Position numbers and translations under genes: made by a program
Shown here: in pieces, positions 25,640 to 45,617 of the stretch
Position numbering within the stretch: the first letter of the stretch is position 1
How the letters are laid out: every line of letters starts with the position of its first letter
The notes under the pieces: model-generated
Told to the model about the DNA's origin: nothing
The model's database searches: none
The model's input: the letters and a program-made list of their open reading frames with translations, nothing else
NCBI GenBank assembly: GCA_965202585.1
Contig: OZ241827.1
Location: forward strand, 2,418,001 to 2,482,000
DNA length: 64,000 bases
DNA from: Thalia democratica
Lineage: Eukaryota
Reading direction: 5' to 3'

Positions 25640-26010
25640 AATAGTATTTAGTTACTGAAAAGATACTGTAATGCTATTTAAAACTTGTTTTACAATATAA
25701 AAAGTTCCAAAAAAAGGTTTTTTGAAGTTTATTCTGAATTTCTTCCAGGTTAATCAAAAAATAAGTTTTTTGGTCCATTTTTAGTAAAAAAAAAATGTAA
25801 GGTAACAAAAACTTTATTAACTATTAAGAGAATATATTTTAAAGCTACTTTAAAATTACTTTTATAACTTTAAATTGTACAAAAAAATCATTAAATAGAT
25901 TTTTTTTATCTAATTGAAATTTCATACTTTACATGTAAAAACAATTAGAAATTTCAGGTTTTTCAAGTTCAGTGATTTTTGTTTGAAATTCCAGAAGTCA
26001 AGGTTTTTAA
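25640..26010. mobile_element. Degenerate internal fragments of subfamily A MITE (boundaries approximate)
   Basis: Shared blocks GAAAAGATACTGTAA.GCTATTT, TTCCAGGT and TTTCAGGTTTTT; no TIRs. Confidence 0.5.
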
Positions 26011-26199
26011 CAAGCATGTCCAATTTTTTATTGAGTCTAATAGTTATCTTATATCCAATCTAAATTCCATAAGTTTACATGCAAAATTTATTCAAAACTC
26101 CAGACTTTGATTAACAAGTATCAATTTTCAAGGATTCAAGTTTAAATTATTACTTTTCTATGCATCAAATAAACTTCAAAGTATTTTTAAATCAAATAA

Positions 26200-28500
26200 A
26201 GCTTGATAATGTTAAAGGGTACTTAGTCAGAAAGAAAATAAGTGTTTGGGAATCGAATAGAAAGCAACCAAACTATTTAAAAATATTTGAAAAGTTAGTT
26301 AAGTTTCATTGATTTTGGGGAAATTATTTCTTCCGGAATAATTATGTTAATTTTATCTTAAGCTGAACAAGCTAGATACTATGGCAGCCAAAAGTCAAAC
26401 ACCATCTTTCTAATAAGAAGAATGGAATTCTTCCCTTAAAGATGGAAATAAACTAAGAGAAATCATTGGAAGATTTACTTATAAGTCAAGGATTTCTACT
26501 TAAATATTTGAGTAATAAAGATCTTCAGTAAATAATCTTAAATCTATTAGGCATAAAAACAACCTTTACAAAATACTTTGCAGAAATAACTTTAGTAAAA
26601 TGCACCAAGTAAAAGAATATAAAGTTTATAGAAAAAAGTTAATAAAAATTAAAACAATTTCAAAAAAAAGTATTTTGAAAAAAGACTTCAAAGGTGTAAT
26701 AAAGATTCAGCAGAGACTTGGAAGGTAATTAATAATATTACAAACAGACAGAAAAAAAATATTCCTCATAAACTTGAAATAAATGAAAAATCTTTTGTTA
26801 ATTCAGATGAAATTGTACATTACTTAAACCTTCATTTTGCCAATATTGGAAAACAAACTTATTTAAAACAGGAAATTCATACAAAGTCTTCTATAAATAG
26901 CCCAAAAAACCACTATAACAGTTTTGTCTGGTTTGATGTACATGAAAATGAAATAATAAGTATTATAAAAAGATTAAGTTCAGATAAAGCTAGTGGTGTA
27001 GATAATATTTCTATTAAAATCTCTAAGAAAATAAACTATCATATAGCTCCAGTTATTAGTGAACTAATCAAGCATTTCATGAAGGTAATTACCCAAATTG
27101 TTTAAATTTAGCTAAAGTTATACCTATATTTAAATCAGGTTCAAAAACACTTCCAGAAAACTATCGACCGATTTCACTTTTATCAAATATTAATAAAATT
27201 ATAGAAAAAGCCATATATAGTCCTTTATACAATTTTTTTACAAAGTTCAATATCTTAAATTCTTCTCAGTTCGAATTTAGGGAGGGACACTCTACTACCT
27301 TAGCTCTTTCAGAGTTTGTAGAAAGTACATTGTCCTCCTTTGATAAGGGAAATGCAGTTTGTGCTGTTTTATTAGATCTGAGCAAGGCCTTTGACTGTGT
27401 GGATAGAAAGATTTTGTTGACAAATTAGAATATATTGGAATAATGGAAAAATGCATAATTTAATAAAATCATATTTAACTGAAAGAAGGCAATTTGTTAA
27501 TTTTGGAGGGCATGAATCAGATTGGGAGGGTGTAGAAGTAGGAGTGCCACAGGGTTCTGTATTGGGACCATTATTGTTTTTGGTATATATAAATGATCTT
27601 TAAAAAAACACCAGTCTAAATGTACTAAACTTTGAAGACGATACATTATTATATACCACATTTACAAAACAGACACTGCACACCTTAATTCAGAACTAGA
27701 TAATGTATCAAAATGGTTAAAGGATAATAGGCTTAAACTAAATACTGATAAAACAAGGTACATGCTCTTTCACTCGGGTAAAAAAAAAGTTTGGAAAAAC
27801 ACAAATTTACATATAAAATAGGTAATACATCCATATTAAAGGTAAAAAATTATAAAATTAATATAATAAATTATTTTAAATTTTAATAAATTTAAAATTG
27901 ATAGTCACCTCAATTGGTCTGACCATATTGAAGCAGTAAAAACTATTGAAGACTATTTGTATTTTATACAAAACAAGGTACTTTTTAAATCAAAATTCCT
28001 TATACTACATCTTTAATTCTCTTCTGATGAGACATGTAAGATATGGTTTGTTGTGTTGGGGTAGGGCAAGTAAAACTAAAATTACTGTGATCGATAAACT
28101 CATTAGTAGAGCATTAATTCTAAATGAATTCATTTATTCTAAAGATTAGAGTGAAAGGGTTAACAGTATAAAAATAGAAAAGAAAATATTAGATGTTAAA
28201 AATATGTTTAAGTATGAGGTAGGAGTTTTTAGGCACAAATTTAAAGAGATACTTTGCCAGTTGACTTTAAGCCTTACTTTACAAACGTTAATAAAATACA
28301 TAATCATCTAACAAGATTTGCCAAAACAAACTACTTTTTCCCAGAGTAAATAGTCTCTTTGGTCTTAAAACATTATCTTACCTTGGTTCTAAACTATGGG
28401 AAGAATTGCCTAGAAACTTTAGATCAGAGCTATCTTGGAGCACTTTAATATGGAATGAGAGAAAACTTACTTAAAAGACAATCTGAAAAATATTAAGCTT
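26200..28500 (+). mobile_element. Decayed CR1/L2-clade non-LTR retrotransposon ORF2 (reverse transcriptase), 5'-truncated, with stops and frameshifts
   Basis: KASGVDNI (~26985), AKVIPIFKSG..NYRPISLLS (27112-27185), DLSKAFD (27375), [20 protein letters not shown] followed by TAA (27541-27603), FEDD (27631), then C-terminal RYGLLCWG-type motifs. Confidence 0.92.
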
Positions 28501-28908
28501 AATCTTTACCAATATTTAAACTTATATCTTTATATTGGTGTTAGTACCTTTTTTGGGACTGATTGCTGTTGTTCTTATAACTGGGTGAAGGTAGAGCTGG
28601 ATTGGTATAATTTGGTTTTGTTATTTTATTTATTATATATACTTTTTTAATTTGTTTCTTGTACATAAAATTTAATAGTAATGTTTTGTCCTTAATGACA
28701 GTGTGATTAAAAAAGTAGATGTATTATTTTCTTTTTTAATTCTATTTTGTAGTTTTTTGTTTATTATATATTAATTGTTTATTGGTTTCAGAAGATAGAG
28801 TTTCTAAATTTAGAAGTAAAAACTTGATACTTTTTAGACATTCTTGTTATTTAATTTTATTTGAAAAAAGTTAGTTTTAGGTTTACAAACAGTTTATTTA
28901 ACTTAATT

Positions 28909-29773
28909 CAGGGTTGCCACTCTTTGAGCCAAAAAATCTTCCCTGAGTGACCAAAAATTTCCCTGAGTAACCTTAAATTTCCCTGAGTTTCCCTGAGTAT
29001 TTTTCAAATATTAAAAAAAAAAATTTCTTTTCTAACACAAATTATTAATACCTCATTCTCATTTTTCTTCTTTAATAATAAAAGGAAGGTTGTATGTGTA
29101 TGCTTCTGCATTAAGTTTATGAAAAAAACTGTTTTCAAAAACTCAATCTTAAAAGGTTTAAACCAATTAAAAACTAAAAACTAAATTTTACCACAACTTT
29201 GTGTAAACTTGTTAGTTAACTTTCTACATAAAAGAATAAAGTTTTTACTGAAAACAAGTAGTTGTAAACAAATAACAAATAACTTTATTATTTGAAAAAT
29301 AAGAACTAATAGTACAACATAGTGTTTTTTAAACTACATAAGTAACTAAAAATAAAAAGTTTATTAGAACTTTTTAATGAATAGTTAACAACAACTTTCA
29401 TTTCTCTAAACTGTTTGATTTTACTTAAGTAAATATAAATTTAAAACTTAAAAAAACTACAATGTTAATACTAAGAATATTGAAGAACTAGCCGCAAGGC
29501 TAAAAAAATTCTAAATAACCACTTAAATAATAAAAATTACTACTTTTGAACAAAATATTGAAACTGGATTAACTAAACCTCATTCTAGATCTAGAAAAAA
29601 ATTTCCCTGAGATTTTCAAAAACTTCCCTGAAATTTAGAGAAAAAATCAAAACTTCCCTGAGTTTCCCTGAGTTAAAAGAAAAATGCCAAAATTCCCTGA
29701 GTTTCCCTGAGATTTTCTACAGTTTGAAAATTCCCTGAGATTCCCTGAGTTCCCTGAGTGTGTGGCAACCCTG
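28909..29773. mobile_element. 865-bp MITE, subfamily C
   Basis: Perfect TIR CAGGGTTGCCAC / GTGGCAACCCTG, TTCCCTGAG subterminal arrays at both ends, perfect 6-bp TSD TTAATT. Confidence 0.92.
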
Positions 29774-32700
29774 TTAATTAAAATACTTTTATTAACACTT
29801 AACTTTTTTCAGAAGATTTTTGTTAAGTTTTATTATTTTGTATTTTAAATTTAGCTGTTTATTGTTAGAAGTGATTTTATTTTAAGTATTGTATTCAATT
29901 ACTAGTGTTAGATTTTATTGATTAAAACTGAAATGTTTACAAATCTATAAAACAGTTAAACATTTTTTTACTCTATTTTTATTTACCTACAAACACATAT
30001 ACTAGAAATTTAAAAACATTATTTTAATATACATGGTGCTCTTACAGTTTTATGACAATACTAAATATTTTATCTTAACTGACATTACTAACTCTCCCCA
30101 TTTATTCAATTTTGAGATATTTGTTGCATTTTTTGTGGTTGCTCTTGTAGAAAGGGCAACAAGAAAAATGTGAATGTACATGATCATAAAAATAGAAATC
30201 TAGGGGAGGAGACAGTGTGGAGCCCATAGTAGACTATGGTTTCCATGGTCAATATTGGCAGTAATGTGTTAAAAAAGGGTGCTTACCATTTAAAAAAAAA
30301 AAATTTGTATATATAGTTACATTTAATTTTTTGTACATAAGTTTTTGATTTTATTTTTTTATTATTGTTTTAAAGTTAGCTCAAAGAATTAGTTACAATT
30401 AAATGGTGTGCAGCTCGATGATCAAAAGGTCTTTCTCCACACCAATCCATTGACCTTTGTTGTGAACATTTTTCTTTCTTTCTTAGGCATATTTAAGCTT
30501 TAAGTGGAAATAAAGTTAAGCCAATAATTAATATAATTAATTGCATAACCTTTGGAAAATAAAAAATATCAAAAAACCTTGAGAAAATTTATTATCAGGT
30601 ATAAAACATCAAACTTATTTAGTTATTCTAAAACTTGAATCCAAATTTATCCTTCTGATAAGATTTTTTGTTATTGTTTTTTGCTGGAAAATTCCCCTTT
30701 TTGCTAAAATCTTAGCATTCAACCTAATAATACTTGCGTTTGTAAAGCTTATCTTGAAAATTTAACAACAAAAACACAATATAATTTTTAATTAAGAATC
30801 AAAAAACTTAAAACCATTTTAAAATTTCTAAAAAAACATTAATCTTATTTATTTCTAATGTAAATTTAGTCATGTTGGTATACTTCTTTGAAAAATAAAA
30901 CAATAAAAATACGTTTGTTTTCCTGAGCTTTTTACTTATTGAACATTTGAACTGTAAATATATTTGTTACTTTTATGTTTTATTCAAATAAATGTTTCCA
31001 AATAATAGAACCAAAACAAAATTTTTTTTTTATTTTATTAAATAAAGCATCATACAATTGTTAATGAATAAAAAAAGTTTTGTAAAACTTGTCCAGTTTT
31101 ATATAAATTTAATAAAAAAGTATAAACTTTTAGAGTGGGTCAACTATAGTTTATAAATTTAAAAAAATCAAACAGTGAATTGATTACCTTGTATTAACTT
31201 AGCAATAAGCTTGAATCTTACATAGCTTGATTTTTTTTTCTCTAATTAAAAAGATATTTTTTAGAAATTTTAAAAATTAATTAATATCACAAAAAGAAAC
31301 TGCTGAAATAGTATTAAACTAAAGTTATGACTTTTTACTAACTGAAAATTTATCTAACATTGAAATCACGTAATCAATCAAACTAAACTGCGGAATCTCA
31401 TCAAGTATCAGCAAAAAAACGAAATTAATAAACAAATAAAAGTAATAATTATAATGATATTATAGTACGTATTTAAAAATTTATAAAAAATTATACTGCC
31501 AAAAGAAATATTTTATATGACACAACGTAATAATATAAATATCTATTTTATAATAGCAGGCTGAATATCCTACCACTCTCTGGTTTGTATATTCTTGTTT
31601 AAGAGGCGCGTCTAAACTTTTTTCAGTGGGGTAGCACATTATTGTTTGTTCAAAAAAAAGTATTTTCTTTCAGCTTTAAATAAAAACTTTAGAAACTTTC
31701 ATGAATGTCTATTATATAACTGTTTAAAAACTTCCTAGCTACATTTTTTTTTTCAAAAACTAGTCCAAACAGAATTCAAAACATTGATAAGTAATTCAGT
31801 TCTTTAAATTTTAGTAAAACAATTAAAATATACACCTTGGTCAATCATTATTGATAACGTGAAAACATTAGCTAACATGAATAACGAAAACATATATAAA
31901 TAAAAACTGAACACAAGAATTAAAAATTAGTAACTAACTTATTTCAATATTAGTTAAACATATTCAATGGTATGTAAATAAATTGATAAATGAAAAAATT
32001 CCAGTTAAAATAATTTAGCTAATGATTAAATATTGATCAAAAATTAATAATGTTCGAAAAACAAAATAAAACCAAAAGTGAAAGTTACAGTTTCTAAAGA
32101 AAAGAATAAAAATCTTTGAGTTGTAATAACGATCAAAATTAATTTTTAAACAATTTTGGTTGGCTTATATTGTATCAAAAGTTTCATTTTTCTTATGTGC
32201 AACTTTTGAAATTATAACATTTTTATGCAGTTTTTACTATTATTCGACATAATAGCCTTCAAAACTACGTCATATTAGTAAGACGTTTAGCAAAAAAGTT
32301 TAGCAAAAAAGCACAAGTAATTCTACTAAAATATGTAAGTCTCTGATTAGATAATGTTTTAATTGAATATTCTAAGCTTTTTTACTTATACTTCTTTTTT
32401 TCAGCGGGTGCACAGGAAACAGGAAATCAGTCTAAACATGCCCCTGAAAACAAATAAGTTGTTTTTTTACAAAAATTTTGAAATCTATTACTAAATTGAA
32501 TGTTAGCACACACAAAGATAAGTTATGCTTTTAGACAAACCAATTCAATTTATTCTTGGGTTAAAGAGTTTCGTAATACAAATTTTAAAAGTACTCTAGC
32601 CGCGAAATATTTTTTTAATTAGGTCTAGCACGCAGACTAAAAAAATCTTCAATACTACTTAATATAGAAATAATATAAAGCAGAATTTCCAAAAGTTGTT

Positions 32701-34640
32701 CATATGGCCCCATGGAGTATTATTTCTGAAACAATGATATACGCCCCTGAGTCTCATCCTTGTTTTCAAAAATAAAATCTTGACTAACTGTACAAAATAT
32801 TGTTCAAAACTTCAAAAAAGTCAGTTTTGTCACACTTTAAATCTAACTTACTTAGCTATTGTTCTGTTGCAGAAACAAAATGTTAGAAAGGCTAAAATTT
32901 AGAAGCTCCCAGACTAGCCAAATGAATCTTTTAGGATTCATTTTTTACTGTGTATGAATATCTTTCGTAGAGGAATACCCTATTTTTAAAAAACATAATG
33001 AATGAAATTTACTTGGATACTAAATCAAACAATCAATAAAATAAAAAGGAGATAATGAATCAAAACAACCATGTAAGTTTTTCATTTTTGAGGTTTTTGA
33101 AGATAAATAAAAAATGGTAAAGTTATCTTTACTAAAGAATTGAACAAAACATTTAAATTTTAGAAAATACTTAAAATAAATGGTGTGGTGTAGTTTAAGT
33201 CAAATGTAAAGTTATGGTTTTAATACAAAGTTCAGAACTTGTTTTGCAGTTTTGTCTTTTTATACAAAAATTGACTGTATTTTGCTTGAAATCATATATA
33301 TTTCTTGTTGTTAGTTTTGAAAACAAAAGTATTCTTATAGTAACTTGAGTTATACTTCTATTTTTATACTCAAAGTTTATGATTGTTTTCAAATATACTT
33401 ATAACGCCAAATTTTTTTTAAATATTTGCTTATTTTTTATTAATTAAATTATGTAGTAGTCATTTGGGTTTTCAAGTTTAAAAGAAAGATAAGGGTTTTA
33501 GTCTATTTATAATAAATATAATATGAATACATTAGTTTATTAGATAAGTTATAAATTCATACCTTTTCATAGTATTTTGAAATTACCACATATCCAAGGT
33601 AATAAAAAAGTGTAGTTAGATTACTATGTAAAAAAAAATGGAAGGATGGAGGAGTTAAACATATTTTAATGATACTGATAAAAGTAGTTGTTTACTGAAA
33701 ATAGATCTATTATGATTATAGAGACTTAAGCTGCTGTTAAAGTCAAAGAGTACTGTGAAATTTTATAAAAAGGGCACACTAAATGTCATGTAAAGATATT
33801 AATAAAAACCTATCTTTATTCAATTTTTAAAGCTTACGACCTAACATTTTTTTTAACTGATCATCGTATGATTAAAATCTATTTTGATAAAAATTTTCAT
33901 TTAATTAAAAACAGAATATTTTAATAGAAATTTCAAATAAATGTTTCTTAAAATTTTTTAACATTTGTTTTTTCAGGTAAATATTGCTTAAAAATTAAAG
34001 AAATATATAGGTATAAGTGAAGAACTACAGTTATAGTTTTCTCCTTTTATAAGCAACCTATAATACTCGATACTGATCAATCAAATCTGAAAACTTGTTT
34101 TTATTTTCTAAAAAAGGAAAACTTAGATAAATTTTACAAACTTAAAGTTGTATAAATAAAGATCTAAGTTGTAAAATAAAACCTGACCCCTTCATACTCC
34201 CATATGGCTCAAATAGTTCATTGAACGTTCTGATAATTTTAATTAAAACTAATTTATATTGTATATTTTTTGAATATAAATTTATAATTGCAAACTATGA
34301 AAAACTGTGCAAGCTTTTGAAAAATAAAATGAAATACAAACTATATTTTACTTCTATGGTTATGAGATGACATTATTGTATACCATATTTATTTGTATGT
34401 AAAATGAATAGATATTAAATTATCTCTATCTTTACCGGGTATAAATAGGTATAGAAACTTAATTTAGTTATAAAATTAACAACAAAAACTATGTACAATT
34501 TATTGCCTTCACAAATAAACGATTCAAAATGGTGCGCGACGCTTAAGTTTTCTAGGCATTAATCTTATACGAACTTCAATATCGATAAAGGTGGAAAAGG
34601 CGATATTTATGAACGTAGAAATCCTATCAAAATTGTTTCA

Positions 34641-34797
34641 TATCGTACCACAGCTTACGTCTTCGGCCACGAAGTCTCACGTAAGCTGTTTTATATCGTT
34701 CTATAGTTAACCTCTGCGGCCGCGCAGTCCCAAGCCAACTATTTTGTATCGTAATGCCATTCACGTCTCCGGCCTCGAAGTCTCACGTGAAAAGCTG
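34641..34797 (-). ncRNA. Candidate structured RNA element: three 53-nt units, each a bulged hairpin
   Basis: TATCGT recurs at 34641/34694/34747 and the inner stems at 34661/34714/34767. Base pairs covary between units, and A-C mismatches on the plus strand become G-U pairs on the minus strand. Confidence 0.55.
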
Positions 34798-34924
34798 CAC
34801 CTACTTCCACGAAGGAAGAGTTGCCCCGTTAAAGCGGCCTAGGTCCGCTCCGTAGGGTAGTTGAGGTATAATAACCTAATTGTAGATGTGCTTCATCGTT
34901 TATATACATTTTTACTCTCTCTTT

Positions 34925-35050
34925 TGCAGGTGGCTTGACATGTTGAAAGTTGCAGGTGGCTTGACATGTTGACAATTGCAGGTGTCTCGTTGCATGCTGG
35001 AAGCTGCAAGTGTTTCGGCATGTTGGAATCTGCAGGTGTCTCGGCACGGT
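34925..35050. repeat. ~26-bp minisatellite, 5 units (TGCAGGTG....CATGTTG...)
   Basis: TGCAG/TGCAA anchors at 34925, 34951, 34977, 35005, 35031. Confidence 0.85.
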
Positions 35051-36698
35051 TTTAATAGCCAGCTTACATACTCACCTGGTTTTGCACACGGCAATTAACG
35101 AATACAAAATTGTATTTATTTTGCCTTTGTCAATCAAAAAATATCGAGTAGAATTTAAAACATAAAATAGAGAATTGTTGTTATTATTTATTTGAAACTT
35201 GTCTTTTGAAAAGAATTTTTAATTAAAAAAGTTTTAAAATTTATTCTAATGCATGCATCGACATATGGACAATTAAAGTGAAATAAGTATAATTTCATAT
35301 AAAATGTCCAACAACATTACTTAAAACTTTTTTTTTTGGCTTAGTTAATGTACTAAATATTAAATATGATATAAGCAATATTTGTGTTGAAATAATATAA
35401 TTTAGAATTGTTAAAACTCAAATGTTGTGGACTAGCAAGTTGAGAAATTTATTTTGTGCTTTGGACTCAATTGTTTTTAATAAAGTTGTAATGATTATAC
35501 TATGTCTATAAAACATATTATAATAGTACTTTAGTCTTTTGTGGGTATCTTAAGTTGAAAACATTTTAGATAATTATTAACCTAAAAAGCAAGTGTTTCA
35601 AAAGCATCTGAAATCTTTTTAACCTGTGTTTGAGCTTAAAGGAAATCTTCTTACCCGTTAACTTTGTGTATTTAAATTTAATTTTTATAAATTTTAGCCA
35701 TATTCATAATAAAGTAACAAAGTATAACTTTTATTAATGTTGTAATGTTAGTAATTTGCAGAAGCTTGTGTTATCAAATATTAAGACTTAACTATCTACA
35801 TGATATGTTTCATTCAATTTTTATAGCTGTTCTTCATTTTTTAAATTTTTTAATTGACTTATCAAAATCTGTTTTAAAGATTCACTGATTATTATGAGTA
35901 GTAAATGTTTTGAGAACTTATTTACTGTAATATGTTAAAAAAGAATTAAGAAACTTAAAGTCTTTTTCAGTGCACTGCTTGATCTTGTAAATATATAGAA
36001 TATAAACCAACATTAGGAGAGTTTGACTATTTTTAATTTAAGAAACTCGTTTATAAAACTAGAATTGTATAGTCTATATACAATTTTTAACAAATATTTT
36101 AAACATGTGTTTCTACACATTTAAACTACAATTGCCAATATACTTTCTATTTTCAAACAATATGAAATAAAACTGTTATACACATTTAAATGCAATATTC
36201 CAAAATTTAACATTAATGTTTCAGATCAACTTGCAAAGCCATGGAATTTTGTTGCTGAAACTTTCCTATTAATTAAAGTATGATGAAAGAGGTTGGAAAA
36301 ACTAGGTTCTTAAAGACTAAAAACATAATGTTGAAAAAAATTGTGAGTGGAAAAGTTCAAGCTTTTTCAATCCGCAAAACAAAAACTGTTTTAGTGTAAA
36401 TCAATGTGTTTAAATTTAACACATTATTAGGTAGAACAGTTTTACAATACAATTAAACAAGCTAAATTTCAAGTACAATAACATTTATTTTCGAATGTTT
36501 TCTTTTTGTCAAAGCTGTTTAAAGTTTTAATGTTTTAGATATTGTTTAAGAATGTTTTTTATTTTTCCTATTCATAGTTAAACATTAACCATTCAAATCA
36601 AAAATATTAACAAACAGTAAGTATGTTTTAGAGTTTTTTATCAGTATCATACAGAACTATTCTTTAAGCAAAAGTCATAAATTAATTTTGTTAAAGTA

Positions 36699-37464
36699 CG
36701 AGTGTGAAGTTAGCTTGAATAAATTTTTAAAAAAATGTCCAAACTTTAGATCCAATTATTTTCCTTATCTTAATAGCTAAATAAAAACTTTTATTTTTAT
36801 TATAGAGAGCGGTCCTTTGTCTTTAATATATATTAAAAAAAAAAAATTTGATTGGGGCTTGGCTTTTAGTGTGGGGCCCCTTAGAAAACAAAAAAATATC
36901 AAATTTTTACTTAGCTCGAATTAAAAAAAAAAACAATTTGTTTTTTCTTTAATATTCATATTTACTAGCAAATAAATTTTATTTAATACATTTTTTTTCT
37001 AACTGTTAATATTTTGTACTATTTAGCCTTATTCTAGAATTCATAATTCCGGAATAAGGTCAAACAGTACGAAACATGAATTTTGTTATCGATTTTATAA
37101 TAAGGCCTTATTCCGGAATTAGGAATTCTAGAATAAGGCTAAATAGTACAAAATATTAACAGTTGGAAAAAAAAAGTCTTATATAAAATTTATATGCTAA
37201 AAAAAGGATATTAAAAGAAAAAAAAAAAGTTTTTAATTTTTTTTAATTCGAGTTAAGTCAAAATTTAATAAGTTTTTTTTCTAAAGGGCCCCACACTAAA
37301 AGTCAAGCCCCAATCAAATTATTTTTTTAAATATATATTAAAGACAAAGGACCGCTCTCTAAAATAAAAATAAAAGTTTTTATTTAGCTGTTAAGATAAG
37401 GAAAATAATTGGATCTAAAGTTTGAACATTTTTTTAAAAATTATTCAAGCTATCTTCACACTCG
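36699..37464. mobile_element. Fold-back MITE with ~360-bp inverted arms and ~42-bp spacer, probably Tc1/mariner-derived
   Basis: CGAGTGTGAAG...GGAATAAGGTC (36699-37061) is the near-perfect reverse complement of GGCCTTATTCC...CTTCACACTCG (37104-37464). The left flank is TA and the right flank TT (mutated TA TSD). Confidence 0.88.
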
Positions 37465-38290
37465 TTGTTAAGGTTTTCAGTTTTTACTATAAGTTGTTTC
37501 TTTGAAAAGTTTTTCAATTCTTTTTTGTTATTAATTAAAAACCTTAATATTTTGTAAGTTTTATTTTGAATACTACAGTTTTACTATACATAAAATTTTA
37601 ATATATTTTGTGCTTTGTGAAATGTTTATTAAGCTACAATAAATAAGATGAAAAAATACATTGGTTTTAAATTAATAGATATGAAAGTTTTTTAATTGTA
37701 AACATTTACCCCTTACATGTTAGTTTGTAAAGTTATTGTTGTATATTGTTTAAAAAAAATTATGACTAAAATTTAAATGACAACACTTGTTTATTCTTGT
37801 TAAAAAAATGTTTTTCAGAAATAAATCAATTTAAGCTCCTTTTAAATTTATCTTACATAACAATAATAAAATTTAGTTTGAGTTTGGTCAATAATTGGTA
37901 ACAATCGCGCTTAGTAGAATAAAATTATTTAAAAGAAGGTAAATTTTAAACAAAATCGAATTAGTTATTATTCAATTAAGCAAGCATCTTAAAATGAAAA
38001 TGTTAAGTTACCATAAATAAGATATGTTTTTCAATCCATAGAAAATATTTCATTTTCAATGTTTCAATTATTATTAAGTACATTTTATTATTAAATTTAA
38101 TAAATTTTTGATTAAATAAAAGCAATCACAAATAACAATAGAGAAATATTTAATATACAAAAAGTTATTTAAACATTTTAAATCCATAAAAGTAAAGAAA
38201 AATATAGTTTAGAAATGCATAAAAGTGCATTGCAAACTTCTTCTCAAGCTTATTCTCTCACTTTTTAAACTTTTTTTTTTGTTTACTACA

Positions 38291-39464
38291 CAGGTTTGCC
38301 ACTCGGTCAGGAAAAGTCAGGAAATCAGGAAAAGTCAGGAAAAATTTTTAAAAATGACAAAAATCAGGAAAAGTCAGGAAAAAAGGGTGGTTTCGAAAAA
38401 AAGTCAGGAAATTCGATAAAATTAAAAAAAAAGTCAGATTTTTGTCAGTTTAAATTTACAAAATTTCTTGTTTTCTAAAGCCTTCAAATGGTAAAAACTA
38501 ATTAAAAGTCCTTTAAAGTCAGAAAAAGTTCAAAACTTTTCCTAGAAATTTACAAAAATATTTAATTTTATTTCCACCTTCATTTGGTATAAATTAGTAA
38601 AATATCCTTTATAAAACTGCAAAAAGTTTTCTGTTAACTTATTGAACAAGTACCCTACTTGAACAAGCAGATTTTGTAAGCTTTTTAGTAATGATGATCT
38701 GTAGCAAGGACACTTCCATAATTAAACTGTGATATATACACACACGTTTATCTAGCATAATTTTAGAATCAAAATGTATTTTATTTAAGTAAATAATTGA
38801 GTTCTTTATAACTAAGCACTTAGTTTAGTATTTTATGTAACAAGTTAATTTGCATACTGAAGCGGAATGCAGACCAGATGAAGGAAACCATATCTTCATT
38901 AGATGAAGAGGTTAAAGTGCTAATAAAAAAATGGAAAATATAAATTTTAGTACATACATTTAAAAAAACAGTATTTGATTAAGTTCTTTATTGTTTTAAT
39001 GTTTTGACTGTAAAAGTTCATTATTTTTTTAAGATTTTAGTTGTGAAACTTTGTTATTAATTCAAGGTTTTAATTGTAAAAGTTCCTTATATGTCGTTTG
39101 TTTATCTAGATACATTTATGCTAGGAAATGCTAAAAAATTGTGAATTTTTTCAGACAAGCTGTAATTATAAGGTAATTATACAAGTATGTTGCTGATATT
39201 TTTATTACAAAGATCAATCATACACAGATGGTTCAAATGATGTACTGGAAGTTTGATGGTAGAATTCAGCAAAAAACTGTTGTTTTTAACTGTATCAAAA
39301 TTAGATTGAAAGCTTTATATAGATTCAGGTTTAAAATTATGCACTTAAAAAAAAGTTTATTTTAAGAGTTTGATTAAGAAAAGTCAGGAAAATTTTAGTA
39401 AAAAGTCAGGAAAAAGTCAGGAAAAGTCGGAAAATTTTTCTCAGCTTGATCAGGTGCAACCATG
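38291..39464. mobile_element. Second copy of subfamily B element, inverted relative to 9900-11393, internally deleted
   Basis: Collinear with the reverse complement of 9900-11393, same CATG-variant end, perfect 6-bp TSD ACTACA. Lacks roughly 350 bp including most of the ORF. Confidence 0.92.
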
Positions 39465-42115
39465 ACTACAGCGCGTGCCTAACAACTCTCTCGTTTTAAC
39501 AGCTTTAAATAAGTTAAAAACAAATTATGACAAGTCTGCTCGTTATGAATAATTTTACAGGAACATTTTTGTTTTTGTTTGTTTTAATTTAGCAGTGTCA
39601 AGCTTTTACTAATTTGCATGACAGAAAAGTTATTTCTTTTTGATCTAACAAAACACATAAGGAGTTTTTAACAATATAGTTCTATATAATATTTATACAC
39701 AATAATATAGCTAACGCTAGTTTATTTTAAAATATATATGAATACAATAACAACAGTTTGTTAATTCTAAACATTAAAATGATTTAATATTTTCTTTACG
39801 ATAAAAATGTTTTAATAAAAATATAAACATATTTGGAAAACGGGAGTTACGTTAAATTCACTTTTAAAAAGAAAACTACATTAGCTTTGTTGTTTTTCGT
39901 AATTGAACTTTATAAGAAAAAAATGTATTCAAAAGTTAAAAACATTTTTTAATATTTCAAAAGAAAACATTTGTAAAACTAAAAACTTTTGTTTGTTTTT
40001 TTTAAACTATTGTAATCGTTGCATACTCCAGAAACTACACTTTTTCTTCTAATATTGTAGAAGCTGCACTTTCTCTTACTTCTTTTATTTTTGCAATTTG
40101 TTTTTATTTTAATTCTTTAGAATCAGGTTCAAAACAAGAGTGTCTTTAAAAAATAGTAGACACTCCCAATAGTATAATTGCTATTGTCTCCAAAATTGAG
40201 AAAAAGTAAATTTTGTCTGTTACGTCACTATGTTTTTCAATAATTGAAATTTATCGAACACTAACAAGTTTTAAAGTACAAATTTGCTAACAACTATTTA
40301 GTCGTAATACTTATTAAACACTAAGCTCGGCAGCAAATTGTATATTTACAATTTGTATATTTTTATAAAAGTTTATCGCAGGCCGAATTTACTGAAATAT
40401 TTATCGTAATCATTTAAAAAAAAAACTATTTTGACAATATGAGCAATATTTTAGCTCGCGTAAGAACTAACTATTAATTTAGGAGTTTATTTTAAAATTT
40501 AGCCATAACTTTGTTGTACACCTTTAATGTGTTTTGTTTAGCTAAAAAGTACATCGCAAGCTGCAATCTAATATTTTTTACTTAGTTAGTTAACGAAAGT
40601 TTAAAAGAACTAAAATATCTATAAAACCATGCCAGATAAACAAAAAAGTTATTAAAAGTATTTAAAAAAGCACATTATGCTAATATTTTAATAAAAATTA
40701 TCTTAACAAAAAATGTTTATACAACTATTTTACTTAAGTTTTTGAAAGTATAACTTACTATTTTATAAACTTTGATATAACGTTATAACTATCTTTATTT
40801 CAACCTTTAAACTAAACTTAAAAAACAGAGTTTGATTTTAAACTTTACTCTTTAAGTTTTTTTTACAAACTACATAAGTCAGTGTTTTGTAAGAAACATG
40901 TTAAAAAAAGTATATATATTTTTTCGTTAAGATAAAAATAACTTGCTAAATAATTTTTTGTAAAACAAACAGTAAAAAATTTTGGTAAATGTTTATACTT
41001 AAATAAGTTTGCTATAGAAAATAGTCTAATTGTTATCATTGGTGGCAAAAATATAAGTAATCTACCTTAACTTGATAAGTAACTTTTTCAAAGAGTTTGT
41101 TTAAAAAACATTTTTTAATTAAGTAACTTTTTTTTGTTAAACTTACAGTTGTTAACGACAATCATTCTTACATAAGAAAAAGCCGTAGAAATTACTGAAT
41201 TATATATTTTTTTAAGTAGGGGTTGTTGCTTAATGTTAAATCCCGTAGACAGTTTGAGTTAGAAGAAATAAATTACCATGTGTAAAGTATACTACTTGTG
41301 TTTTAATAATAAATATTTTATTATTCCTTAGTGAATAAAACTTTACTGCTCAGTGGACTGATATTTTGTAGAAACTTTATATAAATAAATACATTACAAG
41401 CCAGAAATTTTTTTCAAGGTGCCCATCTCTAAACTTAACACCAGTCACCTGACCCAAAGCAGCTTATCAAAAATAAAAAATAAAAATTTTGATATGTGCA
41501 TTAAACTTTTAATAATTTTCTATCAAACAGCTGCTTATAGCCGAAATATTACAAAGCTACAAAACTTAAAGTTTGTTCTTAAACTTATGACCAAATTTTG
41601 CATCGCGAATAAATAAAAAATACCAAAACAAAAGGTTTTATTTATAAAAGTATATTTTACAACCCTACTTGATCATACTTATATAAATTAAGTTAAAACT
41701 TTGAAAAAAAAATCAGCTAAAAAAATCCTAAAGGTATTACTTTAAAAAACTACTTTTAGTAAAAAAATTTTTCTTGGATATTTAAAAACACTTTTAAATT
41801 TAACTGTTAAAATTTCTTCATTGCTATGAACAGTTTGTTGGTAATAATATACGCCACTGTTTAATTTTCCGGTATTTCGATAGTGACATTTCAACTTTTG
41901 CAAACTCATTCTGGTCTGTATGAGTAACGCATGCCAACAAACTATAATTTTTTGTTTACATTTTATACTTCACCATTAAATATACATAATATACTTAAGA
42001 TGTATGAATATAATAATTATACATGCTTTTTTTCTAATGTGTGTTAATATTTTCAAGATTCCGTAGATCTGTTTTTTAATTTACTTGAGAGCAGTGAAAC
42101 GCGGTTAGTCGGAAT

Positions 42116-43889
42116 TAGTGATGTACCGGACTCACTATCCGGGTCCGGGTCCGGCCGGATATTGCTATTTTTGTCTGATATCCGGATCCGGCCGGATTCT
42201 AATTTGAAAAAAAAGTCCGGATCCGGTTCCGGCCGGATTCTAATTTGAAAAAAAAGTCCGGGTCCGGTTCCGGCCGGATTCTAATTTAGAAAAAAAGTCC
42301 GGATCCGGGTCCGGCCGGATCCTAACAGAGATCCGGCCGGACCCGGATCTTGCTAGTCAAAAAGAGCATACTGAAAAGTATTATTTCAAAAACAAACCCT
42401 GTGTAAATTAATAAGAGTCATTTTCGTCAGTTAAAATTAAACACCTACCGTGATTGGCTCATTTTGTACACGTGACTAATTTACACTTGTTTACATTTAA
42501 ACTATGAAGTAAACATTTCATGAAATGCAACTCTTTACATATTTTTAAAATTGAAAACTTTGGAACGAATACTTTCATTATTTATTGTTTAAAGTTGAGC
42601 TCAGAGAATATTTAGAGTTAATACGCTTGAATGTACGAGCCAATGAGAGTCATATGACGAAATGTTTCAAACTAAATACTGATGCAACAAAACATCAGAA
42701 CATGACAGGCAGTTTATATGTAAGCAGTTAGTTAGTTTGGTGTGTAGCTTGAAGCAACAAAATATTTTGAACGTTTTTGTGAATGCTTATTGTAAGTAGT
42801 GTTTTGTTTTAAAAGTGAATATTTCAACAGGTGTTTAATTGTTTAAATTTTTAAGCCAGGTTTATAGTTTAATAGTTTATTAAAAATTTTACAGTTTCTT
42901 GTTTACTTAAAGTTTTATTTAATTTTGAGTTTTTTATTTTAAGTCTTTTGATATAGATTAAAATGTTTTTAAAGTGTTACCAAAGTAATTTATAGTTTTG
43001 TATATGCTAGTATTTCTTGTTGTGTTTTATATAAAAGATTCATCACTCAAAACTGTCGTGTCTGATTATTGAAAGTAGTCTCAGTTAGAATTTAGTATTT
43101 GTTAGATATTAATTAAATAAGGTAGGATTTAATTATGAAGGGTAGTACTAATAAGTTAAGTGTACCACAATCAGTTCACAACTTTACTTCCAAATTGTCA
43201 ACCTTTGCTAGCTGTTCTACTGATTATTAGATCAAAGTAATTTTTTCAGTTTTTAAAAACCTCATTCTGACTCAGGCTTGTTTATACTCAATCTAGCTAG
43301 TTTTATTGACTTTAACAATGGCAACCCTGCTAGTTTAAAAATTTTTGGGAATTTTAGAAAATCTTGGATTGCCTCAGGCTAGTTTAATTTTTAAAAAAAC
43401 TCAGGCTAGTTTTTTAGATTCTGAATGAGTTGAGCTGATCCAGTTTTCAATATTTTGTAATTTTCTAGTGTATTTTGTACAAGAACTTGATTTCAGATTT
43501 TTACTTGTAAATAACACCTAAATTTGTAAACCTTGTGGCTAGCTGTTCTACTTATTATTAGATTAAAGTTCTTTTTTTTTCAGTTTTGAAAAACCTCATT
43601 CTGACTCAGGCTAGTTTATTCTAGTGGTGTACCAGTCTCACTATCCGGGTCCGGCCGGATATTGCCATTTTTGTCTGATATCCGGATCCGGCCGGATTCT
43701 AATTTGAAAAAAAAGTTCGGATCCGGTTCCGGCCGGACTCTAATTTGAAAAAAAAGTCCGGATCCGGTTCCGGCCGGATTCTTATTTGAAAAAATAGTCC
43801 GGATCCGGTTCCGGCCGGATTCTAATTTGAAAAAAAAGTCCGGGTCCGGGTCCGGCCGGACCCAAAATTGTGGGTCCGGTACATCACTA
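42116..43889. mobile_element. Composite hAT-like element with duplicated left end and ~1.26-kb internal cargo
   Basis: TIR TAGTGATGTACCGGA / TCCGGTACATCACTA, exact 8-bp TSD GTCGGAAT at 42108-42115 and 43890-43897, CCGGATCCGG subterminal arrays at 42135-42350 and 43640-43860. Confidence 0.88.
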
Positions 43890-45617
43890 GTCGGAATAAA
43901 GTTTTAACACAAAAACATCTGTGGCATAATATACTTAATTACAATAATTCAATCGAATTTACTAAGATATGAAAAAAGTAACAGCTTAAATAACTTTAAT
44001 ATTCAATAAATGGCGAGTGGTAGTTTAAACTTTTTAATTTTTTCATATCTTAGTAGAATTTATTGAGTTATTGTAATTAAGTTGAGTAAAAAAATATTTT
44101 TATTTAAATTTCACTGATTTTAAAAACTTACCAATTCTTTCTTTAACATTTACATTAAAAAGCAATATGTCACTAAATTTTAATGTTGTTTTATATCTCA
44201 AATTGATGCAGAATTATATTAATGATATAAACAATACTTTGATTACTTTGTCTAATGACACGTACAACTAAGCGTCTTTTAAACTCTAAACGTCGACTGT
44301 ACAACATATATCAACTCAAATTTTTATTAAAAACAATTATTTCTTAAATGGTAAACAAGTATGTGCAAAATTCAAAATTGTTCTTGGTGTTTGCAAAAAT
44401 GAGTTCATTACTTTTAAGCAAGGTCTCTACGTACAACAGTACTTTTTTGTAAACTAGAATTTCAAAAATTATAATGAGCACATAAACACTAATAAATAAA
44501 AAAATACCTAAAATCTTTTCTTTTCTAAACAAACTTAAAGCATATTTTTTTTTGAATTTTAATATCAATTTATAAAAGTTCTTATTACTATTTACATTGC
44601 TTTCTATCATTCTATTACTGTACACATTTAAGCTTTATTTTCACGAAAATTCAAAAGGTGTAAAATACTACCGAATATATCAGATTCAACGAACACTTTG
44701 AAACTAAAGAACAATACTTTATAATAAAAGCAACTCTAAACAATACGTTTGTTAAGTTTGCATTAAAATTCGATCATAAAATACCACCAATCTAAAATTT
44801 TTATTATTAAAGTTACTTTAGTGTATAATAAAATAACAAGTTTAATTTTTTTTTCAAGACAAGATTACCAGCTATAAAGATTGTGGATTAGTTAAAATAA
44901 ATAAATAATGTGGCTGTAGAATATTTTAAATCCCAACTATAATTTATGAATAAATTTCTAATACTTATTAAAACTTAAGGCTTTTCTACATATATAAATT
45001 TATTCTATAATAAGGAAGTAAAATGATACACTTATAAGAATTGTAAAGACCTGCAGTTTAGAATGAAATAAAAGTTGAATTCAAAACTATAAACAATGTT
45101 ATACATAAGAGACATATGTTTTAAGAATGCTAAAACTAGAATTAGATCAATTACTTAAACTTTAAACCTTAAACCAGTTTAAAAAACAAACAATCTTTGA
45201 ACATAAACTCTACAATAAATAACGTGAAAATATTTAAGTTTAATTACTAGAACCGTATAATCACACTAAAACAAATTGCATGAAGGTTTGGGCAGAAAAA
45301 ATGCTTTCTGCCGCTTATTTATAGCTCTGTTCTAAACTTGTACAAACGTTGGGTCAAACATCTTACAATTCGGTTGACTAATTTTATATTATTCGATACT
45401 CAACTAAATGAAATAGCAAGTAAAACTGGTGTTTCATTACAGCTCTAAAATATCAGTCTTCGTTTTATTGTAATCGATTCTACTTCAAAATGGGAGATTA
45501 AAAAGATTTAAAATATATACATTATTATTTACTAAAAAGCTTTTGTATAGTTATAAATATGTACAATTTAAATGTTATAAACATCGTTTTCAATAACTAA
45601 ATCTTGTTTGGTCAGTT

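What the first reader, a model, noticed from the sequence alone, without database searches (positions are those of the whole stretch)
34641..34797. 53-nt-period array of covarying bulged hairpins that fold fully only on the minus strand: candidate unrecognised structured RNA element
Three consecutive units share one architecture although their sequences differ. As minus-strand RNA each unit is a 10-bp stem, a 4-nt GAGA/GGGA bulge, a 5-bp stem and an NGGC loop (UGGC, CGGC, AGGC), joined by a 15-nt linker containing ACGAUA. Unit 1 is perfect (CAGCTTACGT/ACGTAAGCTG; CTTCG/CGAAG). Unit 2 changes pairs compensatorily (inner T-A to G-C giving CTGCG/CGCAG; outer C-G to T-A twice). Unit 3 changes T-A to C-G in the outer stem, which pairs for only 7 bp. 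Four internal stem mismatches on the plus strand (34709/34736, 34710/34735, 34712/34733, 34769/34778) are A-C, i.e. G-U wobbles on the minus strand. That strand asymmetry plus covariation is expected for selection on an RNA fold, not for a neutral tandem repeat. Possible roles (inference): multivalent protein-binding array, retroelement UTR packaging/recognition signal, or intronic regulatory element.
Basis: partly seen in the sequence, partly recalled or inferred. Interest (0 to 1): 0.8.

Follow-up and report, generated by a model that had tools for sequence, protein, structure and literature searches.

The report
Hairpin trio inside a retrotransposon LTR
The three look-alike bulged hairpins are real and lie on the transcribed strand of a leftover long terminal repeat (LTR) from a young, abundant, non-coding jumping gene of a marine plankton animal, so they are most likely an RNA handle the element needs in order to be copied, not a new kind of cellular RNA.

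Summary
Observation confirmed. Window 34637-34795 holds three 53-nt units with no indels. Each is an 11-bp stem, a 4-nt GRGA bulge, a 5-bp stem and an NGGC loop, followed by a 13-nt linker containing ACGAUA. All three fold this way only as minus-strand RNA.

Context: the array sits in a 940-bp solo LTR (34374-35313, sense = minus strand, 4-bp target duplication). The family is a high-copy LTR retrotransposon with 1-kb LTRs, a 1.57-kb ORF-less interior and a primer site matching tRNA-Asn. It has at least 135 LTR copies in the 801-Mb genome, and some pairs of LTRs are 100% identical.

Marine metatranscriptome contigs cover the array. One carries a poly(A) tail 12 nt after the LTR's AATAAA, which independently confirms the sense strand.

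Across the three units 47 of 48 stem positions pair and 7 of 16 pairs change on both sides. All 5 wobbles are G·U on the sense strand. The array is the least variable part of the LTR, though sampling was biased. Diverged subfamilies keep the spacing and core motif and can carry a fourth unit.

Best reading: a cis-acting RNA module in R (or distal U3). A multivalent handle for a helper-supplied protein (packaging) is inferred, not shown. The transcription start and helper element were not found. No Rfam match. New member of a known kind; moderate interest. The scan also noted this same stretch as s1-291898. An unchecked note on other DNA of this genome describes a different hairpin array in an LTR element.

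The parts
34374..35313 (-). Solo LTR (940 bp) of a non-autonomous LTR retrotransposon family. The sense strand runs from TGTTGG to ACAATA.
   Evidence: Homology to 30 other genomic copies ends at these limits. Many other copies are solo LTRs with their own 4-bp duplications, and others flank a 1568-bp interior.
34370..34373 (.). Target-site duplication, ACAT on the plus strand; right-hand copy at 35314-35317.
   Evidence: Read. Other insertions of the family also show 4-bp duplications. RNA and DNA contigs of the empty site at L033 overlap by 4 letters (table 5).
34924..35046 (-). 26-bp tandem repeats in U3, each carrying CACCTGCA (E-box-like); enhancer-like. Their number differs between subfamilies and accounts for most LTR length differences.
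   Evidence: Tandem Repeats Finder. LTR listings and the gap profile at LTR positions 301-350.
34899..34906 (-). TATATAAA, candidate TATA box about 100 nt upstream of the first hairpin.
   Evidence: Intact in 47 of 48 copies. Promoter use is inferred, not shown.
34804..34818 (-). Small upstream hairpin, CUUCC / GGAAG with a UUCGU loop, within a further conserved structured stretch (about 34796-34860).
   Evidence: Fold of the R region. Low diversity at LTR positions 551-600.
34756..34795 (-). Hairpin A: 11-position outer stem with one U·U and one U·G, GAGA bulge, CUUCG/CGGAG inner stem, AGGC loop.
34703..34742 (-). Hairpin B: 11-bp outer stem with three G·U and a sequence unrelated to A or C, GGGA bulge, CUGCG/CGCAG inner stem, CGGC loop.
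34650..34689 (-). Hairpin C: perfect 11-bp outer stem, GAGA bulge, CUUCG/CGAAG inner stem, UGGC loop (AGGC in most other copies).
34637..34649 (-). Linker after hairpin C. The same 13-nt linker type, with invariant ACGAUA, lies at 34743-34755 and 34690-34702.
   Evidence: Alignment A1, invariant columns 44-49.
34580..34587 (.). 8-nt palindrome TATCGATA downstream of the array.
   Evidence: Intact in 40 of 48 copies. Role unknown.
34564..34569 (-). TATAAG, alternative candidate TATA box. If this one is used, the array lies in U3 rather than R.
   Evidence: intact in 44 of 48 copies.
34499..34504 (-). AATAAA polyadenylation signal. The cleavage site is inferred at about 34487 and is followed by a GT-rich stretch. 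U5 is about 34374-34486.
   Evidence: In the copy L033 an RNA contig ends 12 nt after this signal (L033:6744) and carries 21 untemplated A (tables 7 and 8). Motif positions.

Best explanation
The three hairpins are a cis-acting structured RNA module in the LTR of a young, high-copy, non-coding LTR retrotransposon that depends on a helper element. The window holds a solo-LTR relic of one insertion.

Shown:
- The array lies on the element's sense strand.
- It is present in polyadenylated RNA.
- Its three diverged units keep one fold through compensatory and G·U changes.
- It is the least variable part of the LTR.

Inferred:
- Transcription starts about 30 nt after the TATATAAA box. The array would then lie in R, at roughly +80 to +235, and so sit at both ends of the element's RNA.
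- The invariant GRGA bulge, inner stem-loop with NGGC loop and ACGAUA linker are repeated sequence-specific contacts for a protein supplied in trans, most likely the helper element's Gag. This would let an RNA with no genes of its own be chosen for packaging and reverse transcription.
- The variable outer stems only hold these contacts in place.
For: LTR identity:
- Homology limits and 4-bp duplications.
- Paired LTRs, 100% identical in L033, around a 1568-bp interior with no ORF over 96 aa that is not LTR-derived.
- A 12-nt match of the post-LTR sequence to the 3' end of a 129-copy tRNA-Asn gene.

Sense strand and expression:
- RNA contigs from four metatranscriptome runs cover the LTR and interior.
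- One contig ends with a poly(A) tail 12 nt after AATAAA.
- A second RNA study with an oligo-dT library also holds the region.

Fold:
- 47 of 48 cells pair, 7 of 16 pairs change on both sides, and 0 of 500 shuffles match.
- All three units fold alike only on this strand.
- The covariance model scores 74-78 bits on the sense strand; the best plus-strand (antisense) match scores 14.6 bits and overlaps hairpin C.
- All 5 wobbles are G·U on the sense strand.

Constraint:
- Diversity is 0.016 in the array, against 0.039 in U3, 0.066 in downstream R and 0.084 in U5, over 48 copies.
- All 38 sources scanned (37 loci and the window) keep three units in register without indels, even copies about 81% identical overall.
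- The 40th-best genomic hit is 98% identical for the array query and 93% for the neighbouring 248 bp.
- Of the 8 variants shared by two or more copies, 6 lie in the 63 unpaired positions (5 linker, 1 loop) and only 2 in the 96 stem positions. Of those two, one keeps its pair and one breaks the outermost pair of unit B.
- Diverged subfamilies keep the 53-nt spacing, GRGA bulge, NGGC loop and ACGAT linker, and can carry a fourth unit.

General knowledge: a non-coding element must keep every cis signal its helper needs. Conservation in long R regions has been linked to stem-loops (PMC3601003).
Against: - The transcription start is not mapped. A second conserved TATA-like motif (TATAAG) downstream of the array would put the array in U3, present only at the 3' end of the RNA.
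- No helper element or Gag was identified, and no binding was tested.
- Covariation comes from three paralogous units, not from orthologues across species.
- In individual copies, single substitutions break pairs 9 times and keep them 5 times. Hand comparison of five diverged subfamily units gave about 7 kept against 5 broken.
- The fourth unit type consistently has two adjacent A·G mismatches in its outer stem.
- Copies were sampled by similarity to the array, which biases the diversity comparison.
- A global fold of the putative R region sacrifices hairpin B for long-range pairs.
Confidence: 0.6

Rival explanations
1. RNA-level, but not a protein handle. The hairpins are R-region structures that serve reverse transcription or RNA processing: helping the first strand transfer between the two R copies, or modulating use of the poly(A) site at the 5' versus the 3' LTR, as the TAR and polyA hairpins do in HIV-1.
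For: The probable location is between the TATA box and the poly(A) site. The whole putative R folds strongly on the sense strand, -122.8 kcal/mol, z -5.3, against -97.8, z -2.7, antisense. Hairpins present at both ends of HIV-1 RNA have such roles (PMC2645353 and PMC13185573, abstracts seen).
Against: A purely structural role does not explain why the unpaired bulge, loop and linker letters are the invariant parts while the long stems vary. The array ends about 150 nt before the poly(A) signal. The start site is unmapped.
Confidence: 0.18
2. DNA-level regulatory repeats. The three units are binding sites in double-stranded DNA, such as palindromic transcription-factor sites or CGATA clusters, spaced at 53 bp (about five helical turns). 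They would act as an enhancer or promoter-proximal element, or an insulator-like element, of the LTR.
For: The sequence is palindromic and CpG-rich. ACGATA is invariant at 53-bp spacing, and a perfect TATCGATA lies just downstream. If the TATAAG box is the promoter, the array lies 70-230 bp upstream of it. U3 regions commonly carry tandem regulatory repeats (own knowledge).
Against: Double changes that keep pairing in stems whose sequences differ between units are not needed for protein binding to duplex DNA. All five transition mismatches fall as G·U on the transcribed strand, about 1 in 32 by chance. Two of the three units do not form the palindrome on the other strand. The LTR already has a separate enhancer-like repeat block directly upstream of a consensus TATA box.
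Confidence: 0.12
3. No function. A palindromic segment was triplicated by chance in the founder LTR. It looks conserved only because the family is young and because copies were sampled by similarity to it.
For: Many copies are 95-100% identical overall. The sampling was biased. Individual copies lose pairs freely.
Against: The units are about 60-80% alike, yet 47 of 48 stem cells pair and there are no indels. The outer stem of unit B shares little sequence with A and C but pairs at the same 11 positions. LTR copies 81-86% identical overall still keep the array at 61-78 bits per unit. Subfamilies with diverged interiors keep the core motif and spacing.
Confidence: 0.08
4. Precursors of small RNAs (a microRNA-like or siRNA cluster).
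For: A tandem hairpin array in a transcribed repeat. In some searches the only other weak hits were unrelated.
Against: The stems are 11 + 5 bp, interrupted by a 4-nt bulge, with 4-nt loops. That is too short for known Drosha or Dicer substrates (own knowledge). No Rfam microRNA match overlaps the array. No small-RNA data were available.
Confidence: 0.02

Closest known systems
TAR and polyA hairpins in the R region of HIV-1, and the duplicated TAR of HIV-2
   Same: Bulged stem-loops on the sense RNA inside the LTR, between the promoter and the poly(A) site, and therefore at both ends of the genomic RNA. The bulge and loop letters matter for recognition. (PMC2645353 abstract; the HIV-2 detail is from my own knowledge.)
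   Different: The array does not sit at +1; it would begin about 80 nt downstream of the inferred start. It has three periodic units with a conserved linker. The element encodes no trans-activator. There is no sequence or Rfam similarity. The location in R is itself inferred.
Retroviral packaging signals (Psi), such as HIV-1 SL1-SL3 and the paired GACG-loop hairpins of murine leukaemia virus
   Same: Several short hairpins exposing G-rich unpaired letters that Gag/nucleocapsid binds multivalently (PMC7395439 and PMC7599994 abstracts; details from my own knowledge). This is the mechanism I consider most likely here.
   Different: Psi lies between the primer site and gag. This array lies inside the LTR, upstream of the primer site. 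No binding protein is known here, and the units are near-identical in architecture and strictly periodic.
Repeated RNA elements in retroviral 3' untranslated regions (direct repeats of Rous sarcoma virus; constitutive transport element of Mason-Pfizer monkey virus)
   Same: Repeated structured motifs needed in cis for export or packaging of unspliced RNA (own knowledge). This would be the nearest analogue if the array turns out to lie in U3.
   Different: Different architecture and sequence. No Rfam match of any kind overlaps the array. Function is untested.
Cassandra-type non-autonomous LTR elements of plants, whose LTRs carry a 5S-rRNA-like module
   Same: A small non-coding LTR retrotransposon that carries a conserved structured RNA module inside each LTR (own knowledge, not checked here).
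   Different: That module is derived from a cellular RNA gene with its own polymerase III promoter. This array matches no known RNA family and is part of the polymerase II transcript with a poly(A) tail.
General LTR architecture described by Benachenhou et al. 2013 (PMC3601003)
   Same: TG start, TATA box, AATAAA, a GT-rich stretch after it, and residual conservation in long R regions linked to stem-loops. All are present here.
   Different: The 3' end reads CAATA rather than CA. The host is a marine invertebrate not covered by those models.

Membership tests
LTR retrotransposon (LTR) | Direct long terminal repeats flanking an interior, with short target-site duplications at each insertion | tested here: met
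   LTR pairs of about 1 kb at 2.55-kb spacing, 100% identical in L033. 4-bp duplications at full elements and solo LTRs, including the window copy.
LTR retrotransposon (LTR) | Primer binding site complementary to a tRNA 3' end just after the 5' LTR | tested here: met
   One base after the LTR, TGGCGTCCTCGG matches the last 12 nt (with CCA) of tRNA-Asn(GTT), a gene present 129 times. The match is short, and L033 has one mismatch.
LTR retrotransposon (LTR) | Polypurine tract just before the 3' LTR | tested here: inconclusive
   Only a weak purine-rich stretch (AACAGAGTCGA) after an A/T run precedes the 3' LTR.
LTR retrotransposon (LTR) | TG...CA termini, TATA box, poly(A) signal and GT-rich stretch within the LTR | tested here: met
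   TGTTGG start, TATATAAA, AATAAA, GT-rich stretch, and a poly(A) addition site seen in RNA. The 3' end is CAATA, so the terminal inverted repeat is imperfect.
Autonomous LTR retrotransposon (Ty3/Gypsy, Bel-Pao or Copia) | gag and pol open reading frames | tested here: not met
   No ORF over about 50 aa in the 1568-bp interior. The longer ORFs lie in the LTR repeats. The superfamily of the helper is unknown.
Any described RNA family (Rfam 15) | A covariance-model match at or near the gathering score | tested here: not met
   Permissive scan of 33500-36000 on both strands: no hit overlaps the array, and the three weak hits elsewhere are far below threshold.
TAR-like trans-activation element | Hairpin at the very 5' end of the transcript, plus an element-encoded activator | tested here: not met
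   The array begins about 110 nt after the start of the TATA box, so not at +1. The element has no genes. The start site itself is not mapped.
Retroviral-type packaging signal | Specific binding by the cognate Gag, and a requirement for encapsidation | not testable with these tools
   No helper Gag was identified.
microRNA precursor cluster | About 22 bp or more of near-continuous stem giving discrete small RNAs | tested here: not met
   Stems of 11 + 5 bp split by a 4-nt bulge. No microRNA family match on the array. Small-RNA data not available.

The most novel reading that the evidence does not exclude
The array is a natural multi-hairpin tag: a unit of fixed architecture, present in three or four copies, read sequence-specifically at its GRGA bulge and NGGC loop by one particular RNA-binding protein. 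A gene-less parasite would use it to outcompete its helper's own RNA for particles. Hairpin arrays may then be a recurrent solution among this animal's LTR elements.
Probability: 0.15. Interest if true: 0.6.

Novelty: new member of a known kind. Interest (0 to 1): 0.35.

Why it matters
Cis-acting RNA signals of LTR retrotransposons are known in detail for only a few retroviruses and yeast elements. Almost nothing is known for marine invertebrates.

Here a gene-less, recently active family offers a compact 159-nt candidate signal. It has clear predictions: invariant bulge, loop and linker, and freely covarying outer stems. This could be used to find out which helper protein selects RNAs for reverse transcription in this animal.

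It also explains a striking sequence feature as part of a repeat family, so it should not be annotated as a cellular non-coding RNA gene or as a regulatory element of the neighbouring locus.

Tried and rejected
- **Rfam scan of the region:** nothing on the array.
- **Tandem Repeats Finder:** misses the array, because the units are too diverged.
- **Metagenome contigs, core motif scan:** 120 hits, all single chance matches in GC-rich, mostly bacterial contigs. None had the outer stem or linker. The pattern was too GC-rich and degenerate.
- **Covariance-model search of the genome and of all loci in hand:** only this family.
- **Search for an autonomous helper:**
  - All LTR copies in hand are solo or flank the same non-coding interior.
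  - A possible 12-kb relative at C2:41957829-41970438, and a diverged copy on C10, were seen only as coordinates.
I used two patterns within the stated limit instead.
- **Pairing between tRNA-Asn and the array:** the duplex output was not interpretable, so I dropped it. A shared 9-mer between the tRNA 5' end and the window's hairpin C is about what chance allows.
- **Transcription start:** cannot be read from contigs, and both candidate TATA motifs are equally conserved.
- **Intronic or coding context:** no ORF of 90 aa or more within 26-44 kb of the window.
- **Small-RNA precursor reading:** rejected on stem length.

Full report
**1. What is in the sequence**

On the minus strand, window 34637-34795 reads as three units of exactly 53 nt with no gaps between them. 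Each unit has:
- an 11-position outer stem;
- a 4-nt bulge on the 5' side (GAGA, GGGA, GAGA);
- a 5-bp inner stem (CUUCG/CGGAG, CUGCG/CGCAG, CUUCG/CGAAG);
- a 4-nt loop (AGGC, CGGC, UGGC);
- a 13-nt linker with an invariant ACGAUA.

Folded alone, the three 40-nt hairpins give this same structure as minus-strand RNA: -15.2, -14.8 and -19.5 kcal/mol. On the plus strand only the third (34650-34689) keeps it. The full stretch folds at -57.1 kcal/mol (z -3.95) on the minus strand and -42.1 (z -2.8) on the plus strand.

For the named structure, 47 of 48 stem cells are standard pairs and 7 of 16 pairs change on both sides between units. No shuffle out of 500 reaches these values, and sliding the partner columns drops pairing to 33-46%.

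Five pairs are G·U on the minus strand, which makes them A-C on the plus strand. None goes the other way. The invariant letters are concentrated in the bulge, inner stem, loop and linker, while the outer stems vary.

**2. What it belongs to**

The 201 bp around the array occur at 98-100% identity at 40 or more places in the window's own 801-Mb genome. Against 30 of these copies, homology in the window runs from about 34374 to 35313.

Elsewhere, two such 1-kb blocks often lie about 2.55 kb apart in direct orientation. In L033 they are 100% identical over 1020 bp and enclose 1568 bp. Insertions are flanked by 4-bp duplications, both at full elements and at many solitary blocks. The window copy has ACAT at 34370-34373 and 35314-35317.

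One base after the upstream block comes TGGCGTCCTCGG. This is complementary to the last 12 nt, with CCA, of a tRNA-Asn(GTT) gene present 129 times in the genome. The interior has no open reading frame of note.

This is a non-autonomous LTR retrotransposon, and the window holds a solo LTR of it. The primer site fixes the sense strand as the window's minus strand, which is the strand on which the hairpins fold.

Copy numbers:
- The 31-nt core of unit B occurs 135 times with up to 3 mismatches, 83 of them exact, and never in the reversed control.
- The degenerate core motif occurs 325 times, mostly as triplets 53 nt apart.
- About 25 interiors are near full length.
- One locus on C4 has three LTRs and two interiors in tandem.

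**3. RNA evidence**

Contigs from four runs of a marine metatranscriptome study lie on the LTR and the interior of L033. Contigs in three of those runs (X1, X2, X3) span the whole array; the X4 contig covers only about its first half.

One 703-nt contig ends at L033:6744 and continues with 21 untemplated A. That position is 12 nt after AATAAA and just before a GT-rich stretch. This sets the R/U5 border at LTR position 906 of 1019 and independently confirms the sense strand.

The region is also held by an oligo-dT RNA library from a second study, and by DNA runs from 11 studies of marine samples. Contigs cannot show the transcription start.

**4. Map of the LTR (sense strand, L033 numbering)**

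| Feature | LTR position |
|---|---|
| U3 with a block of 26-bp repeats carrying CACCTGCA | 270-470 |
| TATATAAA | 487 |
| Conserved structured stretch | 540-597 |
| Hairpin array | 598-756 |
| TATCGATA | 806 |
| Second TATA-like motif, TATAAG | 824 |
| AATAAA | 889 |
| Poly(A) site | 906 |
| U5 | to 1019 |

The repeat block is shorter in the window copy.

The enhancer-like repeats lie directly upstream of a consensus TATA box. I therefore think transcription most likely starts near position 517, which puts the array in R at both ends of the RNA.

Both TATA motifs are equally conserved (47 and 44 of 48 copies). A start after position 850 would put the array in U3, at the 3' end of the RNA only, and I cannot exclude that. 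Either way the array is in the polyadenylated sense RNA.

The putative R folds at -122.8 kcal/mol (z -5.3) on the sense strand against -97.8 (z -2.7) antisense, although that global fold trades hairpin B for long-range pairs.

**5. Is the fold under selection?**

Between units, yes, as far as three sequences can show (section 1). The outer stem of unit B differs from those of A and C at about half of its positions, yet pairs at the same 11 positions using three G·U.

Within the family:
- 48 distinct LTR copies give a diversity of 0.016 in the array, against 0.039 in U3, 0.037 just upstream, 0.066 downstream in R and 0.084 in U5.
- All 38 sources scanned (37 loci and the window) keep three units in register without a single indel. 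This includes LTRs only 81-86% identical overall.
- A caveat applies: these copies were found by similarity to the array. As a partial control, the 40th-best genomic hit is 98% identical for the array query but 93% for the adjoining 248 bp.

Single-copy substitutions hit stems and unpaired positions alike, and break pairs 9 times against 5 kept. This is what decay of dead insertions should look like, so it neither supports nor refutes selection on the active lineage.

Eight variants are shared by two or more copies and so passed through replication. Five lie in linkers and one in a loop. One stem change keeps a wobble pair. One breaks the outermost pair of unit B. The counts are small.

Diverged subfamilies, read through short pattern matches, keep the 53-nt spacing, GRGA bulge, CUKCG/CGNAG inner stem, NGGC loop and ACGAT linker. 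Some convert the G·U pairs of unit B into A-U, and one shows G-C changed to A-U. Some arrays contain a fourth unit type whose outer stem consistently carries two adjacent A·G mismatches.

**6. Mechanism**

A gene-less element can spread only if its RNA carries every signal the helper's proteins need. The array is the best-kept part of the LTR. It has the anatomy of a repeated, sequence-specific protein site: fixed unpaired letters presented on stems whose own sequence is free.

I therefore favour a multivalent handle for a trans-supplied protein, most plausibly the helper's Gag, acting in RNA selection for packaging. This step is inference.

The rivals are:
- a role of R-region hairpins in strand transfer or poly(A) site control;
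- double-stranded DNA sites (the ACGATA motifs recur every five helical turns, and a perfect TATCGATA follows);
- no function at all.

The strand-specific wobbles, the compensatory changes and the match between the folding strand and the transcribed strand argue against the last two.

**7. Comparison and novelty**

No Rfam family matches. In kind, this belongs with the stem-loops of retroviral and retrotransposon LTRs and leaders: TAR and polyA hairpins, Psi hairpins, and 3' repeat elements. Conservation in long R regions has already been linked to stem-loops (PMC3601003; abstracts).

What is particular here:
- the strict 53-nt periodicity;
- three to four units;
- the invariant bulge, loop and linker set;
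- the setting in a non-coding element of a marine plankton animal.

Earlier unchecked notes of this scan report another hairpin array carried by an LTR element, and Gag proteins with a cold-shock domain, in the same genome. I did not test them. They are leads for the helper question only.

**8. Limits**

- The transcription start, the helper element and the host species were not identified.
- The metagenome scan returned only chance hits.

Noticed in passing
window 34924-35046: About five 26-bp tandem repeats carrying CACCTGCA (E-box-like) lie in the U3 part of the same LTR. Younger copies have about eight, which explains most LTR length classes (940 to 1058 bp).
   Followed up: partly
window 34580-34587: A perfect 8-nt palindrome TATCGATA lies about 50 nt downstream of the array, and the three linkers carry the half-motif CGATA at 53-bp spacing. 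Either a DNA-level site or an RNA dimerisation-type palindrome is possible.
   Followed up: no
L033:5724-5834 and 9446-9552: The full element in L033 is inserted into another repeat. That repeat is itself present in RNA contigs with its own poly(A) tail after 9552. Contigs of the empty site skip exactly the 3611-bp insertion, with a 4-letter overlap.
   Followed up: no
G000 C4:84844791-84850149 (L031, L077-L079): Three LTRs and two interiors lie in tandem (LTR-interior-LTR-interior-LTR), presumably from unequal recombination between elements.
   Followed up: partly
G000, e.g. L045-L050: The tRNA-Asn(GTT) gene whose 3' end matches the primer site is present at least 129 times, often as nearby inverted pairs and in clusters with other tRNA genes.
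   Followed up: no
G000 C5:43061256-43061417: A diverged subfamily carries at least four hairpin units in 53-nt register. The extra unit type combines the base of unit B's stem with the top of unit C's stem and has two adjacent A·G mismatches.
   Followed up: partly
G000 C2:41957829-41970438: Two pieces 78-87% identical to the 5' and 3' parts of the non-coding interior lie 11.5 kb apart in the same orientation, with a diverged hairpin pair about 2.8 kb beyond. This could be a longer relative, possibly the helper, or a nested insertion. It could not be read.
   Followed up: no
window 26000-44000: There is no open reading frame of 90 aa or more in 18 kb around the LTR. The surroundings are about 24% G+C, against about 49% in the array.
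   Followed up: partly
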